A stretch of DNA of 63,730 bases, filler included, from Octopus bimaculoides (Eukaryota), in the NCBI RefSeq assembly GCF_001194135.2. It is 6 parts of 5 records of this genome, joined end to end, with 100 filler letters (N's around TTAATTAATTAA, not from the genome) between each part and the next. Parts side by side here need not be neighbours in the genome. Positions count along the whole stretch, not along the records: positions 14,718 to 44,273 come from NC_068993.1; 5 more parts are not named here. One strand, written 5' to 3'. A program made the position numbers and the translations under genes. Below are positions 38,284 through 44,373 of this stretch, piece after piece. The stretch's first letter is position 1. Every line of letters starts with the position of its first letter. The notes beneath the pieces are model-generated. The model saw only the letters and a list, made by a program, of their open reading frames with translations, ran no database searches and was not told where the DNA came from.

Positions 38284-39625
38284 GCACACACACACACATG
38301 TATATATATATACACACACACATATACATATATATATATGTGTATAAAATTCATATGTATGCACATGTGCATGCGTATATGTGTGTGTGTGTGTGTATGT
38401 ACATATACATTTTACACACGCTCGCACGTACACACACATGTGTGTATGAATATATGTATGTATGTATCTGTGTGTTTTTATATATGAATGTATAAGCAAA
38501 CGCCTATGCGTGTGTTAGAAAGAAATGATTGATACATGTGTAAAGAGGAAGGAGAGCAGGAAAGAGTAGCAGATGAAGACGAATAAAGAAAGATAAAAAA
38601 GGAAAATGAAGGAATACAGAAATGAAAGTAGAAGTGACGGAGAAGATGAAAGATTAATGACGCAGATTAATAGATTATAAGGCATAAATAATAAAAAAAG
38701 CAAAAATAACTGAATTTATTGAAGACATAATGAGTTCTTAGACAAACCCATACCTAGTTTTTTTTAACAGACACTGCCACAGAGAAATTTTAAATTATGT
38801 ATATAAATACATATCTATTCATCTTTTTATGACAAGCTAAGTTTCCTATATGAGGCCAGAAAATATTTAAATTACATTTAGAGCATGACCTAAACTTCTA
38901 GACTTTCAATTTTAACACCCAAAGAGTAATTCAGATTTAAACAGCTACTGAATATTTTAAACAAGAGTGTACTTCTCATTTTTGTTCATTTGAGACATGA
39001 AAAGTGTCAAAAGCCATCTTTTCTGGCCAGCTAAAAATACCACCTACTTATATGATTTTGTAAACCCTTGAAAGTTTCGTTACAAAAAAGCCGATACACC
39101 TATTTACTAAGTGTTAAATGCTGGACGAAACTTTGAGCTTGGGCTTTTACTCTGCCAGAGCGAAGAATTAAATCCAATAAAACCAAAAGAAACCAAATCT
39201 AATGACACATCTGCTGATTAAAAAAACTTCCTCTACATACCTACTTCTTTTTTGTGAACGGCTAAAACGATCCCATGACCTGAAGCTGACACACTTGAAT
39301 ATACACACCTGTTTATAAGGCTCTACATGCATGAATAAAATCCAAACAATAATATGACCCTAAGTCTAATCAATAAAATCTACCCTAGAACCTAATCAAC
39401 ATTCATTGCACTCCAGACACCTCAGGAATATTTTATATCAACAGAGACTATATAAAACCCAAATTAACTTAATGCATCACAGTTCGACGATGTCTTAGCT
39501 GGCCAAAACGTCGACGTCACTATCAATATTATTCTTTTAAAAAATAATAAATTTTTACTCTACAAATGTATGGAATAACACTTCAGATTGATGTAAAATT
39601 GTTTTTCTTAACTGAACAGAAAAAT

Positions 39626-39663
<38 letters not shown>

Positions 39664-41235
39664 GCGCGCACGGTGTATGTGTGTGTGTGCGTGTGTGTGC
39701 TAGAAACATCGATGTGTGGAAATCTGACAGGTGGCAGTAGTGGACCGATATGTTGTTTTTACACCTTTTTTTTACTATAAGAGAGAAGTTTTCTTCACCA
39801 TAACTACACTGAATTTGCTTTTAGCAGCTGAAATATGTCACAAACATATTTCAACTAACCTGAAGTTCGAATATGCCTAAAGACTGCTTGGTGCTAATAT
39901 TACTGTAATCTCTCTCTATCTCTCTATTATATACATACATGCATATATATATATATATANNNNNNNNNNNNNNNNNNNNNNNNNNNNNNNNNNNNNNNNN
40001 NNNNNNNNNNNNNNNNNNNNNNNNNNNNNNNNNNNNNNNNNNNNNNNNNNNNNNNNNNNNNNNNNNNNNNNNNNNNNNNNNNNNNNNNNNNNNNNNNNNN
40101 NNNNNNNNNNNNNNNNATATATATGTATGTATGTATGTATAAGAGTAGAAGTTAATATTATTAAATAATATCAATTTCAACCAGTGATCGGCATACTTAA
40201 AAAAAAAGAAAAGAAAAAAACTTTTATAAGCTGTTTTAGTACCGAATTGCAATATGTATATTGGTATTCATATTGAGAAAGAATCACGTTCGACGTAAGG
40301 TACTAAAAGTCACAGAAATATAAAATAACAGAGAATAAAATGTCTAGAACAGGCAGTGAATGCTTTTTTGTCTGCTGGTGGTGCTTCTCTGGCTTTTAGC
40401 ACTATACGGCAATACGAAATTCTTTCTCAAAATGAATACCGCACTTTTATGTTACAGTACATCTGCTTTCAGTTAGGTATACCTACATACACACACACTC
40501 ACACAAATACACACAAACACACACAAACGCATACATACGCACAACAAACACACACAATACACACACACACATCTACTTAAATTACAGACATCGGAGAAGG
40601 CCTCATAACCTGCAGTATTATAAAAATGGTAAGGATATATGTGCTTTAAGCATGATATACTGATTCCTATTTTGAATAAAAAAGGTTTCTGTCGCTCATA
40701 ACAAATATGTCCGTATGTTTATATGTGTATTTTTATTTATGTGTTTCAACCAAGTGGCTGCGGTCATGCTGGTGCATGTATATTTGTATATATATGTATA
40801 TACGTATATATATNNNNNNNNNNNNNNNNNNNNNNNNNNNNNNNNNNNNNNNNNNNNNNNNNNNNNNNNNNNNNNNNNNNNNNNNNNNNNNNNNNNNNNN
40901 NNNNNNNNNNNNNNNNNNNNNNNNNNNNNNNNNNNNNNNNNNNNNNNNNNNNNNNNNNNNNNNNNNNNNNNNNNNNNNNNNNNNNNNNNNNNNNNNNNNN
41001 NNNNNNNNNNNNNNNNNNNNNNNNNNNNNNNNNNNNNNNNNNNNNNNNNNNNNNNNNNNNNNNNNNNNNNNNNNNNNNNNNNNNNNNNNNNNNNNNNNNN
41101 NNNNNNNNNNNNNNNNNNNNNNNNNNNNNNNNNNNNNNNNNNNNNNNNNNNNNNNNNNNNNNNNNNNNNNNNNNNNNNNNNNNNNNNNNNNNNNNNNNNN
41201 NNNNNNNNNNNNNNNNNNNNNNNNNNNNNNNNNNN

Positions 41236-41267
<32 letters not shown>

Positions 41268-41444
41268 CACAGCTAAGACTGGCTCGAAACTTTGGCTTTT
41301 TCCGTACTCGCTTCTCCATTAGTATATATGCTTTCGTCAATTTGTACACATTAGTGAATTGCTAAATCATCCTTTGATTTGGATGACGAAAACATATATA
41401 CTAATAGAGATGCGAGTCCGGAAAAAGTTGCAGTGTCAAGCCAG

Positions 41445-41495
41445 TCCTAACTGATGAGGCAACGAAAATTGCCGAAACTGATGTCAGTATTAAGA
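41445..41495 (+). ncRNA. Type I hammerhead ribozyme motif, near canonical
   Basis: TCCTAA (stem I) - CTGATGA (41451-41457) - GGCAA/cgaaaa/TTGCC (helix II) - GAAA (41474-41477) - stem III ACTG/atgt/CAGT - A (GUA triplet, predicted cut after 41489) - TTAAGA (stem I, 5 of 6 pairs). All core nucleotides present. Confidence 0.85.
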
Positions 41496-42696
41496 AATCT
41501 CGATCGGCATTTTTCGGACGATTAAGGTCCCAGTAAGTGTATATGTTTACATTTACGTGCGCTGACTACAACATTGGAGTATGATAGCTCTTATTTCTAG
41601 CAATGTAGGTATTTCTAACACCCTAGTCACAATTATAATTCTCCTTTTTGGTGAAATATTTCAAACTGATATATATATATATATATATATAAGCTCATGC
41701 ATGCATTTGTACATTCCTGTCTTTGAGTTTGTCCTGCACCTATTGCCTGTGAACAGTTTTATTTTCCTGTCAATATTCGTTGTGTGGCTGATTGCTTCAA
41801 ATTGAAGGTTCCACCGAAAAGTAAATGATATTAGCGTATCGATCTATCAGTCCTATGGAGAAGCGATACCTGAATGTCACGACAATCTTGTCTTTAACTA
41901 CATTATTCAATGTTTTTTTTTTTAATTCAAAACAAGAGTCGTGATATGACAGAGGTTTATCGCTTTCATCGTAGGTTGAGATACGTATACACCAGAGAAT
42001 TGAGTCAACAATGGAGATACTGCTGAATGCACACACTACTCTCTTAAAGAAAGCTTGGTACATTGTGTAATAAAGTTCTAGGTACATTCTGGGTAAATAT
42101 AAACGACTATAGGGATAATTGGGACATATTTGCACACAGGTTAACAGGATTTTTGAGATCCTTTTGTTTCATTGCATTTCTTAGAATTTACAGCAATACC
42201 AAAGCATTCGTCCAGAACAAATGCAGAAAATTCTAGGTGGTCATTCTAACAACTAAAAGTAAAAGTCTAAACTTTCCAAATTATCTTCTTAAAAAAAGGT
42301 AATGATGAATTGGTTAATTTGTTTCTAGATACAGAATATATTAAGATAAAATAGACGGATTGGACACAGCCTGAACGTCTATGTTCATCGATCTGATCGG
42401 CCAAGACTAATACAAAGTTAAACAAGAGCTACGTTTGTCGAACGGCTATCATAAAAGCTACTACTACGCCCCACATCACGCTTATGGAATCTGGACAACC
42501 AAACTTCGAAGTAAACGTTATACCAAACACCTCCATCTCGTAAAGAACTTTCTGGAATTCTTTCCAATTATATATTTCACATGACGAACATCATGAGCTT
42601 AAGCTGAATATAACTGTATCGATTTGAACAGTCTGGATGAATTAGCAATGTATTATAGACATTAATTATTTCTTAATACTACAACAATACAAAAGG

Positions 42697-43026: not shown

Positions 43027-43473
43027 NNNNNNNNNNNNNNNNNNNNNNNNNNNNNNNNNNNNNNNNNNNNNNNNNNNNNNNNNNNNNNNNNNNNNNNNNN
43101 NNNNNNNNNNNNNNNNNNNNNNNNNNNNNNNNNNNNNNNNNNNNNNNNNNNNNNNNNNNNNNNNNNNNNNNNNNNNNNNNNNNNNNNNNNNNNNNNNNNN
43201 NNNNNNNNNNNNNNNNNNNNNNNNNNNNNNNNNNNNNNNNNNNNNNNNNNNNNNNNNNNNNNNNNNNNNNNNNNNNNNNNNNNNNNNNNNNNNNNNNNNN
43301 NNNNNNNNNNNNNNNNNNNNNNNNNNNNNNNNNNNNNNNNNNNNNNNNNNNNNNNNNNNNNNNNNNNNNNNNNNNNNNNNNNNNNNNNNNNNNNNNNNNN
43401 NNNNNNNNNNNNNNNNNNNNNNNNNNNNNNNNNNNNNNNNNNNNNNNNNNNNNNNNNNNNNNNNNNNNNNNNN

Positions 43474-43546
43474 CAACTCATGCTGAAGCAACTCATGCTG
43501 AAGCAACTCATGCTGAAGCAACTGATGCTGAAGCAACTCATGCTGA
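43474..43546. repeat. 15-bp minisatellite (caactcatgctgaag)n at a gap edge
   Basis: About 4.8 units visible, one variant unit. Confidence 0.9.
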
Positions 43547-43555
43547 TCCCTATAT

Positions 43556-43590
<35 letters not shown>

Positions 43591-44373
43591 TATGTAGACA
43601 TACACCCGCACACACACACACACACGCGCGCGCGCATACACACGCATGTATACATACGCACGCATGCACACGCACAAATGAATGTATGTATGTATTTAAA
43701 AAGAGAAATAAGTGAATGCGGATAGCGGCACGAATTTGGATAATAAAGACGAACTGACTCCCATTAAATGTCATATCCTGATTTATTTAAATTTTCTGTC
43801 CTATAAGAGAAGGTAAACAACCGCCTCAGAGAAAATGCCGCCGAAAGAACGTACGATAACCTTAAGGCTGAAGAATTCTCTAGAATTGGCATGCTATGAA
43901 GAAAAACATTTTTGGTGATTTCTGTTTTTTAGTTGGTCCAAAGGCGATGCATGCGTTTCTGCCTCAATATGCGCCAGTAGCATAGCCGTTGTGTTAATTT
44001 GACTCCGGCAGAAGTTAAGAGTTTGACATATACAACAATTGTTGCGAAGTTTTATGGTTTTGGATCATTCACATAATTAAATATAACTGAGCTAAGATAC
44101 GTAGATCAATGTGAGCGGTGGCATGAATTTAAACAATAAAAATGAATCATGCTGTATTAAATACCATACAAAAATCAATTCGTGATTTACTGAAATTATC
44201 TTGGCTCTTAGAGACGGTACAGCAATAAATATATATATATATATATATATGTACATATATATATATATATATANNNNNNNNNNNNNNNNNNNNNNNNNNN
44301 NNNNNNNNNNNNNNNNNTTAATTAATTAANNNNNNNNNNNNNNNNNNNNNNNNNNNNNNNNNNNNNNNNNNNN

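What the first reader, a model, noticed from the sequence alone, without database searches (positions are those of the whole stretch)
41445..41495. Near-canonical type I hammerhead ribozyme with an intramolecular helix III and no visible parent ORF
Seen: every catalytic-core nucleotide (CUGAUGA, G10.1-C11.1, GAAA, A15.1-U16.1, GUA triplet), a perfect 5-bp helix II, a 4-5 bp helix III closed by a loop, and 5 of 6 pairs in stem I. Known: animal hammerheads mostly ride on Penelope-like elements and non-autonomous retrozymes, and many are minimal forms that need dimerisation. Inference: this copy could self-cleave as a monomer after 41489. No RT frame was found beside it, so it may mark a retrozyme-like non-autonomous element or a retained intronic ribozyme.
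Basis: partly seen in the sequence, partly recalled or inferred. Interest (0 to 1): 0.85.

Follow-up and report, generated by a model that had tools for sequence, protein, structure and literature searches.

The report
Hammerhead ribozyme on an octopus-like repeat
A complete self-cleaving hammerhead ribozyme motif sits at the end of a long RNA hairpin in non-coding, octopus-like DNA, and is most likely a stray copy of a known kind of small mobile element rather than a new kind of ribozyme.

Summary
At 41445-41495 (+) every invariant hammerhead core base is present. Helix II is a perfect 5 bp, helix III is 4 bp with a closing loop, stem I pairs at 5 of 6 positions, and the cleavage triplet is GUA (cut after 41489). 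It is the only such motif in the piece. A motif of this quality arises by chance about 2e-5 times per piece, but about twice per 2.7 Gb genome.

Context argues against chance. The ribozyme abuts, in register with stem I, the only nearby long hairpin of complex sequence (70-nt arms). The roughly 400-bp AT-rich non-coding unit folds far better than shuffles (z -9.2) and is bracketed by (TA)n. These features fit a solo or decayed monomer of a metazoan non-LTR retrozyme, or a non-autonomous derivative of a Penelope-like element. The host looks like an octopus.

Weak points: no Rfam family reaches its gathering score. The best match is Hammerhead_3 at 28.9 bits against 48.5, seen only in small sub-windows. 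No related copy was found, because no animal genome could be searched. Tandem structure is only hinted at (p about 0.01). The catalytic fold is 14 kcal/mol above the predicted minimum.

Verdict: a real motif, a new member of a known kind, of modest interest.

The parts
41236..41264 (.). Left (TA)n run. It follows directly on the assembly gap 40814-41235.
41270..41339 (+). L arm of the long inverted repeat. Its first bases, CAGCUAAGAC, are complementary to the stem I 5' strand plus C3-G5, and they resemble the bases around the cleavage site (CAGUAUUAAGAA).
   Evidence: I15: 70-nt arms, 83% complementary; E 2e-24.
41340..41383 (+). 44-nt apical region of the hairpin, with two small internal hairpins.
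41384..41453 (+). R arm of the inverted repeat. Its 3' end is the stem I 5' strand (41445-41450) plus C3 U4 G5 of the core.
41445..41450 (+). Stem I, 5' strand: UCCUAA.
41451..41457 (+). Core box CUGAUGA (C3-A9).
41458..41473 (+). Helix II: GGCAA/UUGCC, 5 bp, with hexaloop CGAAAA.
41474..41476 (+). Core G12 A13 A14.
41477..41488 (+). Helix III: ACUG/CAGU, 4 bp including A15.1-U16.1, with loop AUGU.
41489..41490 (+). Predicted scissile bond, between A17 (41489) and U1.1 (41490). Cleavage triplet GUA.
   Evidence: with the NUH rule from established hammerhead knowledge. Inferred, not assayed.
41490..41495 (+). Stem I, 3' strand: UUAAGA. It forms 5 of 6 pairs, with a C41447/A41493 mismatch.
41490..41565 (+). 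Downstream segment D. It is weakly similar to the L arm and so also complementary to R (for example GUCCGGAAAA 41415-41424 with UUUUUCGGAC 41510-41519). It could be the start of a diverged second unit.
   Evidence: z 3.0, 6 of 500 shuffles; z 2.5 without the first 10 nt; 3 of 648 control windows do as well.
41464..41515 (+). Competing hairpin: 41464-41468 and 41470-41475 pair with 41504-41509 and 41511-41515. This disrupts helix II and the GAAA box in the predicted minimum-energy fold.
41649..41670 (+). Possible decayed second core (UGGUGA..AAUAUUUC..AAACUGAU), ending where the right (TA)n begins. Not statistically significant.
   Evidence: score 10.5 against background 7.2 +/- 1.8.
41669..41691 (.). 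Right (TA)n run, closing the unit of about 400 bp.

Best explanation
This is a genuine type I hammerhead ribozyme motif carried on a short, non-coding, AT-rich, strongly self-paired unit (about 41270-41668). The unit lies inside a (TA)n microsatellite of an octopus-like genome. It is most likely a solo or decayed copy of a metazoan non-LTR retrozyme, meaning a non-autonomous hammerhead-bearing retroelement related to the terminal repeats of Penelope-like elements (PLEs).

If the + strand is transcribed, R (41445-41450) pairs with 41490-41495 as stem I, and helices II and III form as local hairpins. The core then catalyses in-line attack of the 2'-OH of A41489 on the 41489/41490 phosphate. This leaves a 2',3'-cyclic phosphate and a 5'-OH.

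In a tandem or circular parent, the sequence 3' of the cut would be the L arm. The L-R hairpin would then be an extended stem I, and the whole 216-217-nt monomer (41273/4-41489) would be a rod capped by the ribozyme. That is the form known retrozymes take as circular RNA.

Shown: the motif, the hairpin and its register, the fold statistics, the flanks and the absence of coding capacity. Inferred: cleavage, the retroelement origin, and any circular RNA. At this locus only one intact ribozyme is visible, so it probably cannot release a circle by itself.
For: - Complete core and three helices.
- Chance expectation of 2e-5 per piece.
- The ribozyme abuts one of only three complex-sequence inverted repeats in the piece, in register with stem I.
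- The unit folds at -137 kcal/mol, z -9.2. Folded as a circle it gives z -8.0, with 67% of bases paired.
- GC is 0.37. The unit of about 400 bp and the 216-nt monomer both lie within the 150-450 bp range, and under the <45-50% GC limit, reported for metazoan retrozymes (PMC7229834).
- Retrozyme monomers are known as dispersed copies (bioRxiv 10.64898/2026.07.22.740005).
- PLEs carry hammerheads in their terminal repeats, form inverted-repeat insertions and prefer microsatellites including (TA)n (PMC8557442, PMC4209133).
- Both L and D place an A opposite C41447, and D weakly resembles L.
- The host is octopus-like, and octopus genomes hold Penelope families (PMC13282606).
- The giant squid genome has 235 Rfam Hammerhead_1 hits (PMC6962438).
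Against: - No second copy of the unit exists in the 29.5-kb piece.
- No relative was found in any searchable collection. None of those collections holds an animal genome, so this is not evidence of single-copy status.
- No Rfam hammerhead model reaches gathering score, and the sub-threshold hit vanishes in the whole-piece scan.
- Tandem structure is only hinted at. L and D are about 55-60% identical, far less than expected for two units of one recent insertion while the core stays intact.
- Helix III (4 bp, non-palindromic loop) and helix II (5 bp) differ from the canonical metazoan form (PMC4209133).
- The catalytic fold is 14 kcal/mol above the predicted minimum.
- Because I defined the unit by its (TA)n flanks, those flanks are consistent with the model but not independent evidence.
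Confidence: 0.6

Rival explanations
1. This is the stump of an autonomous Penelope-like element. On this reading it is a heavily 5'-truncated copy retaining only the ribozyme-bearing terminal repeat, joined head-to-head to an inverted partial copy (the L arm), and inserted into a (TA)n target by the GIY-YIG endonuclease.
For: - PLE insertions often carry an adjacent inverted 5'-truncated copy that forms an inverted repeat.
- PLEs place the hammerhead near the 3' end and show a bias for microsatellites, including (TA)n (PMC8557442).
- Octopus genomes contain Penelope families (PMC13282606).
- The inverted repeat and the (TA)n flanks are both present here.
Against: - No RT or GIY-YIG coding remnant lies anywhere near.
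- The inverted arm stops exactly at C3-G5 rather than carrying a reverse-complement ribozyme, which an inverted copy keeping its 3' end should have.
- Metazoan PLE hammerheads are minimal forms lacking a stable helix III (PMC4209133), whereas this one has 4 bp.
Confidence: 0.15
2. This is a chance hammerhead-like sequence next to an unrelated foldback or MITE-like hairpin, with no ribozyme ancestry.
For: - About 2 motifs of this quality are expected by chance in a 2.7 Gb genome.
- Core plus helix II alone occurs by chance inside bacterial genes.
- No covariance model reaches threshold.
- No relatives were found.
- Other complex hairpins exist nearby.
Against: - Expectation within this piece is 2e-5.
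- All 9 pairs in helices II and III are Watson-Crick.
- The hairpin ends in register with stem I, and about 1.6e-3 is my own rough estimate of the probability of that adjacency given 3 complex inverted repeats in 27 kb.
- If the hairpin were an independent insertion, removing it would delete C3-G5. The rest of a perfect ribozyme would then have had to pre-exist without them.
- No target-site duplication of the TA, 3-bp or 8-bp kind flanks the hairpin.
- Cephalopods are already known to carry hundreds of hammerheads (PMC6962438).
Confidence: 0.07
3. This is a host-domesticated ribozyme, either intronic or in a UTR, that processes a cellular transcript, as HH9/HH10 do in amniote introns or the discontinuous Clec2 hammerhead does.
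For: The core is intact although the surrounding arms carry 17% mismatches. That would be compatible with selection.
Against: - No exon, gene or conserved ORF was detected in the 29.5-kb piece.
- The surroundings are microsatellites, transposon debris and assembly gaps.
- HH9/HH10 models do not hit.
- Given about 8% decay per arm, an intact core has a chance of about 6% by my own estimate, so it is not strong evidence of selection.
Confidence: 0.03
4. This is a ribozyme-terminated hairpin RNA. The hammerhead would define a precise 3' end 36 nt past the base of a 70-bp hairpin, which would then feed small-RNA production.
For: - A long, nearly perfect hairpin lies immediately 5' of a ribozyme that stays attached to the upstream fragment after cleavage.
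- The hairpin scores as miRNA-precursor-like (MIR530, 33.9 bits, sub-threshold).
Against: - There is no precedent known to me.
- The miRNA-like hit is far below gathering score, among about a hundred equally meaningless hairpin hits on microsatellites.
- No expression data are available.
- The retrozyme rod explains the same hairpin more simply.
Confidence: 0.03

Closest known systems
Metazoan non-LTR retrozymes: type I hammerhead in short AT-rich tandem repeats, expressed as circular RNA (Cervera and de la Pena 2020, PMC7229834)
   Same: - Type I hammerhead.
- A non-coding unit of a few hundred bp (here about 400 bp, or a 216-nt monomer).
- GC 0.37.
- A strongly self-paired predicted RNA.
- No LTR, PBS or PPT.
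- No RT nearby.
- Dispersed monomers are known.
   Different: - Only one intact ribozyme is visible, and tandem repetition is not demonstrated.
- Helix III is 4 bp with a non-palindromic loop, against the usual 1-2 bp.
- Helix II is 5 bp, not 4.
- The conserved loop 1/loop 2 contacts could not be recognised.
- Copy number and expression are unknown.
Minimal hammerheads in the pseudo-LTRs of Penelope-like elements (Cervera and de la Pena 2014, PMC4209133; Craig et al. 2021, PMC8557442)
   Same: - Type I topology.
- Association with an inverted-repeat structure.
- Microsatellite (TA)n surroundings.
- A host lineage that carries Penelope elements.
   Different: - No RT/GIY-YIG ORF.
- No direct terminal repeats.
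- PLE motifs in animals lack a stable helix III and are thought to act as dimers, whereas this one has a closed 4-bp helix III.
Schistosoma Sm-alpha SINE-like element and newt satellite 2 / cave cricket pDo500 hammerheads (the classical type I hammerheads that I take to underlie Rfam Hammerhead_1, RF00163)
   Same: Type I hammerheads embedded in short non-coding repeats of animal genomes. The catalytic core is identical.
   Different: - No detectable sequence relationship.
- No Hammerhead_1 match was listed at E <= 10. One lower-scoring overlapping match from the same clan was hidden by the tool, and I could not see which family it was.
- The classical members have a weak, often palindromic helix III and defined loop-loop contacts.
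Rfam Hammerhead_3 (RF00008), the best-scoring model
   Same: Core boxes and helix II align with high posterior probability.
   Different: - The topology is type I, not type III.
- The model's stem I hairpin is absent.
- The score is 28.9 bits against a gathering score of 48.5.

Membership tests
Hammerhead ribozyme, type I | Invariant core: C3 U4 G5 A6 N7 G8 A9, and G12 A13 A14. | tested here: met
   CUGAUGA at 41451-41457 and GAA at 41474-41476.
Hammerhead ribozyme, type I | G10.1-C11.1 closing helix II, A15.1-U16.1 closing helix III, and H17 (not G) at the cleavage site. | tested here: met
   G41458-C41473, A41477-U41488 and A41489.
Hammerhead ribozyme, type I | Three helices around the core, with helices II and III closed by loops and stem I open. 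| tested here: met
   Helix II is 5 bp, helix III is 4 bp, and stem I pairs at 5 of 6 positions.
Hammerhead ribozyme, type I | Tertiary contact between the stem I internal loop and loop 2, needed for fast cleavage at physiological Mg2+. | not testable with these tools
   An unpaired region does follow six stem I positions, and loop 2 is an A-rich hexaloop. With one sequence and no 3D tool, the contact cannot be judged.
Hammerhead ribozyme, type I | Covariance-model score at or above Rfam gathering for a hammerhead family. | tested here: not met
   No hit at gathering. The best match is Hammerhead_3 at 28.9 bits against 48.5, and it is absent from the whole-piece E-value scan.
Hammerhead ribozyme, type I | Site-specific self-cleavage. 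| not testable with these tools
   This needs in vitro transcription. Predicted folds show the catalytic fold 14 kcal/mol above the minimum.
Metazoan non-LTR retrozyme | Carries a type I hammerhead and has no coding capacity. | tested here: met
Metazoan non-LTR retrozyme | Head-to-tail tandem repeats of 150-450 bp, each with a hammerhead. | tested here: inconclusive
   - One intact ribozyme is present.
- The downstream segment resembles the unit start only weakly (z 2.5-3.0).
- A possible decayed second core is not significant.
- TRF finds no array.
- An assembly gap lies 35 nt upstream.
Metazoan non-LTR retrozyme | Low GC (<45-50%) and a highly self-paired RNA. | tested here: met
   GC 0.37. 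Fold z is -9.2 linear and -8.0 circular.
Metazoan non-LTR retrozyme | Many related copies in the same genome, and expression as linear and circular RNA. | not testable with these tools
   No animal genome or transcriptome could be searched. Indirect routes found nothing.
Penelope-like element | ORF with a telomerase-like RT and a GIY-YIG endonuclease, between direct pseudo-LTRs. | tested here: not met
   No such ORF or direct repeat lies near the motif.
Penelope-like element | Insertion signatures: a microsatellite target and an adjacent inverted partial copy. | tested here: inconclusive
   (TA)n lies on both sides and an inverted repeat is present. However, the inverted arm lacks the ribozyme, and (TA)n is common throughout this piece.

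The most novel reading that the evidence does not exclude
Octopods may harbour a retrozyme lineage that Rfam models miss. Its hammerhead would be competent as a monomer (a stable 4-bp helix III). Its whole monomer of about 216 nt would be one long extended stem I, so a rod capped by the ribozyme. Alternatively, the ribozyme may serve to cut a precise 3' end onto a long hairpin RNA that enters a small-RNA pathway.
Probability: 0.08. Interest if true: 0.55.

Novelty: new member of a known kind. Interest (0 to 1): 0.3.

Why it matters
If confirmed, this would add cephalopods to the animals with retrozyme-type hammerhead elements. It would also give an example whose helix III is stable enough for monomeric cleavage, unlike most animal type I motifs. 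A third point would be that standard Rfam thresholds miss some complete hammerheads in animal genomes. Beyond that, it is an expected by-product of Penelope/retrozyme activity and does not open a new question.

Tried and rejected
- **Rfam at gathering score** over the piece gave no hit. The whole-piece E-value scan did not list the hammerhead and was dominated by microsatellite miRNA-like false positives.
- **JGI metagenome scan** with a degenerate motif pattern gave one hit (L001). It lies at the start of a bacterial membrane-protein ORF and fails the full descriptor, so it is a chance match.
- **GTDB scan** gave two hits. One lies inside a bacterial ORF that I recognise as ispF (L004), and one is in a MAG (L003). 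L003 fails even the loose full-ribozyme descriptor. L004 could not be scanned (file missing); by eye, its A15.1 has no U16.1 partner.
- **IMG/VR scans** with three patterns found nothing.
- **Literature search** for the exact ribozyme sequence found nothing.
- **Protein-space route to paralogues**, using the 54-aa stop-free frame across the ribozyme, found no word-sharing candidate. The exhaustive search returned only P0121, a bacterial protein with 12 internal repeats whose weak matches add up. That hit is spurious.
- **Exact-ORF look-ups** to recover the same locus elsewhere: four window ORFs and an octopus protein (P0104) are not on record.
- **The 123-codon ORF** 310 nt downstream (41800-42168, minus strand) has no Pfam hit and no homologue, so it is not a gene.
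- **A clear second tandem unit**: local alignment of the unit against the downstream sequence is not significant. Global tests give only z 2-3, and the putative second core is within background.
- **Type III reading** suggested by the Rfam alignment (upstream CAGUC as helix III and cleavage site) is rejected, because only 4 nt would remain for stem I.
- **DNA-transposon MITE reading** of the hairpin: no TA, 3-bp or 8-bp target-site duplication is present.

Full report
**1. The observation**

The sequence at 41445-41495 (+) reads UCCUAA-CUGAUGA-GGCAA(CGAAAA)UUGCC-GAA-ACUG(AUGU)CAGU-A|UUAAGA.

- All invariant hammerhead positions are present: C3-A9, G12-A14, G10.1-C11.1, A15.1-U16.1 and a non-G at position 17.
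- Helix II is five Watson-Crick pairs with a hexaloop.
- Helix III is four pairs with a tetraloop.
- Stem I pairs at five of six positions, with a C41447/A41493 mismatch.
- The order of elements (stem I 5' strand, core, closed helix II, GAAA, closed helix III, cleavage site, stem I 3' strand) is type I.
- The predicted scissile bond lies between A41489 and U41490.

**2. Is it more than chance?**

A descriptor scan of both strands finds this as the only type I hammerhead in the piece, even with loose rules. The bare pattern CTGATGA..CGAAAC occurs once, against 0.02 expected.

Random sequence with the piece's dinucleotide statistics gave 6 loose hits and no strict hit in 40 Mb. A seeded simulation measured the rate of motifs as good as this one at 3.9e-4 per Mb per strand. 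That is about 2e-5 expected for the piece, but about two for a 2.7-Gb genome. The motif alone therefore does not exclude chance if the whole genome was scanned.

Scans of very large collections illustrate the same caution. Core plus helix II turned up at the start of a bacterial membrane-protein ORF and inside a bacterial ORF that I recognise as ispF. The hits that could be scanned (L001, L003) do not have the full three-helix architecture. L004 fails it by eye.

**3. Covariance models**

- No Rfam family reaches its gathering score anywhere in the piece.
- Restricting the search to 181 nt or 84 nt gives Hammerhead_3 at 28.9 and 26.9 bits (gathering 48.5), aligned over the core and helix II only.
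- The type III layout that this alignment implies (upstream CAGUC as the cleavage site) leaves only 4 nt for stem I, so I reject it.
- In the whole-piece E-value scan the hammerhead is not listed at all. Microsatellites meanwhile collect miRNA-like hits with E-values down to 3e-9, all far below gathering.

Rfam support is therefore weak, and sub-threshold E-values in this sequence are not trustworthy.

**4. Surroundings**

The piece is AT-rich draft assembly with eight N gaps and dense microsatellites. It has no tRNA and no recognisable gene.

A frameshifted LINE-like C-terminal remnant at 29.2-30.7 kb has 746 homologues across invertebrates. The best named match is 88% to an Octopus bimaculoides protein. 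The DNA is therefore from an octopus or a close relative.

The ORFs around the ribozyme have no Pfam match and no homologue. 'No RT beside it' is confirmed.

**5. The unit that carries the ribozyme**

Immediately 5' of the ribozyme, and overlapping it, lies an inverted repeat with 70-nt arms at 83% complementarity (41270-41339 and 41384-41453). It is one of only three complex-sequence inverted repeats in the piece.

Its 3' arm (R) ends with the stem I 5' strand plus C3-G5. Its 5' arm (L) begins CAGCUAAGAC. That is both the complement of that end and a near-copy of the bases around the cleavage site (CAGUA|UUAAGAA).

L places an A opposite C41447, exactly as the true stem I 3' strand does. Both partners face the same mismatch, which suggests a single U-to-C change in R.

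The stretch 41262-41667 folds at -137 kcal/mol (z -9.2). As a circle it gives z -8.0, with 67% of bases paired. GC is 0.37. (TA)n runs bracket the unit at 41236-41264 and 41669-41691, and an assembly gap begins 35 nt upstream.

**6. What the architecture implies**

In a type I hammerhead, the stem I 3' strand must follow nucleotide 17. In a tandem or circular parent, the sequence after nucleotide 17 is the start of the next (or the same) unit, which here would be L. The L-R hairpin would then simply be an extended stem I. The monomer 41273/4-41489 (216-217 nt) would be a rod capped by the ribozyme's three-way junction.

This is how retrozyme circular RNAs are described: 170-400 nt, highly self-paired, low GC, type I hammerhead, tandem units of 150-450 bp (PMC7229834). 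Dispersed monomers also occur (bioRxiv 10.64898/2026.07.22.740005).

The segment after the cut (D, 41490-41565) resembles L weakly:
- z 3.0, with 6 of 500 shuffles scoring as well.
- z 2.5 without the first 10 nt.
- 3 of 648 control windows score as well.

D can also form a 10-bp helix with R.

A possible decayed second core, ending exactly at the right (TA)n (41649-41670), is within background.

I treat 'more than one unit' as a hint and not as a result. L and D are much more diverged than L is from the complement of R. That is hard to square with two units of one recent insertion.

**7. Link to Penelope-like elements**

- PLEs carry hammerheads in their terminal repeats (PMC4209133).
- They often sit next to an inverted partial copy and insert preferentially into microsatellites, including (TA)n (PMC8557442).
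- Animal retrozymes have been argued to derive from PLE terminal repeats (bioRxiv 10.64898/2026.07.22.740005).
- Octopus genomes contain Penelope families (PMC13282606).
- The giant squid genome yielded 235 Rfam Hammerhead_1 hits (PMC6962438).

The (TA)n flanks and the inverted repeat here fit that biology. There are two caveats. (TA)n is common in this piece and I used it to delimit the unit. Also, the inverted arm lacks a reverse-complement ribozyme.

**8. Mechanism and activity**

If the RNA is transcribed and folds into the catalytic form, it would cleave by the standard hammerhead reaction, giving a 2',3'-cyclic phosphate on A41489 and a 5'-OH on U41490. This is established chemistry and is inferred here, not assayed.

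The 4-bp helix III should allow monomeric action. The canonical animal motif differs: helix I is 6 bp, helix II is 4 bp, and helix III is 1-2 bp with a palindromic loop, and it works as a dimer (PMC4209133).

Predicted folding is less favourable to the catalytic form:
- The catalytic fold is 14 kcal/mol above the minimum.
- L sequesters the stem I 5' strand and C3-G5.
- A hairpin between 41464-41475 and 41504-41515 competes with helix II and the GAAA box.
- Helices II and III are nevertheless the local minimum when the transcript ends near 41500, so a co-transcriptional window exists.

With a single intact ribozyme, the locus could release a 5' fragment ending in the hairpin plus ribozyme, but not a circle.

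**9. Search for relatives**

Nothing related was found in:
- JGI metagenomes;
- GTDB genomes;
- IMG/VR;
- the full-text literature;
- protein space, using the stop-free frame across the ribozyme.

The single hit, P0121, is a bacterial repeat protein and is spurious. None of these collections contains an animal genome.

**10. Verdict**

The motif is real and very unlikely to be chance once its context is counted. The most likely identity is a solo or decayed monomer of a retrozyme-type, PLE-related non-autonomous element in an octopus-like genome (0.6).

The alternatives are:
- a PLE stump (0.15);
- a chance motif (0.07);
- a domesticated ribozyme (0.03);
- a ribozyme-terminated hairpin RNA (0.03).

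It is a new member of a known kind. Its distinguishing points are a stable helix III, a 5-bp helix II and invisibility to Rfam thresholds. Interest is modest (0.3).

Noticed in passing
window 29204-30671 (+): Frameshifted C-terminal remnant of a LINE-like retroelement protein, spread over several frames. The 111-aa segment 30339-30671 has 746 homologues across invertebrates. The best named match is 88% to an Octopus bimaculoides protein, which identifies the host lineage. Pfam finds no domain.
   Followed up: partly
window 21466-21692 and 22137-22356: Complex-sequence inverted repeat (231 nt, 67%) bracketing a region whose minus-strand ORF (22038-22268) looks to me like a mariner-type N-terminal helix-turn-helix. 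Pfam gave no hit, so the transposon reading is unverified.
   Followed up: partly
window 40263-40317 and 40385-40440: A second complex hairpin (56-nt arms, 80%, 68-nt loop) about 1 kb upstream of the ribozyme unit, on the far side of the assembly gap. It has no sequence similarity to the ribozyme unit.
   Followed up: no
window 43474-43546: A 15-nt minisatellite (CAACTCATGCTGAAG, 4.9 copies, 96% matches) directly after the assembly gap 43027-43473. A related TCATGCTG motif also precedes the gap at 40764.
   Followed up: no
window 37420-37731: (GAA)n microsatellite of 104 copies, followed by (ATG)27 at 37831-37912. These create long spurious ORFs.
   Followed up: no
window 16215-16655, 36119-36428, 38161-38535, 39622-39715, 43531-43706: TA/CA microsatellites draw sub-threshold Rfam miRNA-family hits (mir-3149, mir-297, mir-466 and others) with E-values down to 3e-9, all far below gathering score. 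They are false positives, and a warning about E-values in this kind of sequence.
   Followed up: yes
L001 11642-11682 (-); L004 913-938 (+); L003 6872-6899 (+): Hammerhead-like core plus helix II occurs by chance inside bacterial sequences: at the start of a 251-aa membrane-protein-like ORF, inside a 159-aa ORF I recognise as ispF (Desulforamulus), and in a MAG. L001 and L003 fail even the loose full-ribozyme descriptor. L004 was judged by eye only.
   Followed up: yes
P0121: A 1495-aa bacterial protein with 12 near-identical internal repeats scored E 5e-21 against a 54-aa non-coding translation, by summing 12 weak matches. It is an artefact of repeat proteins in exhaustive HMMER searches.
   Followed up: yes
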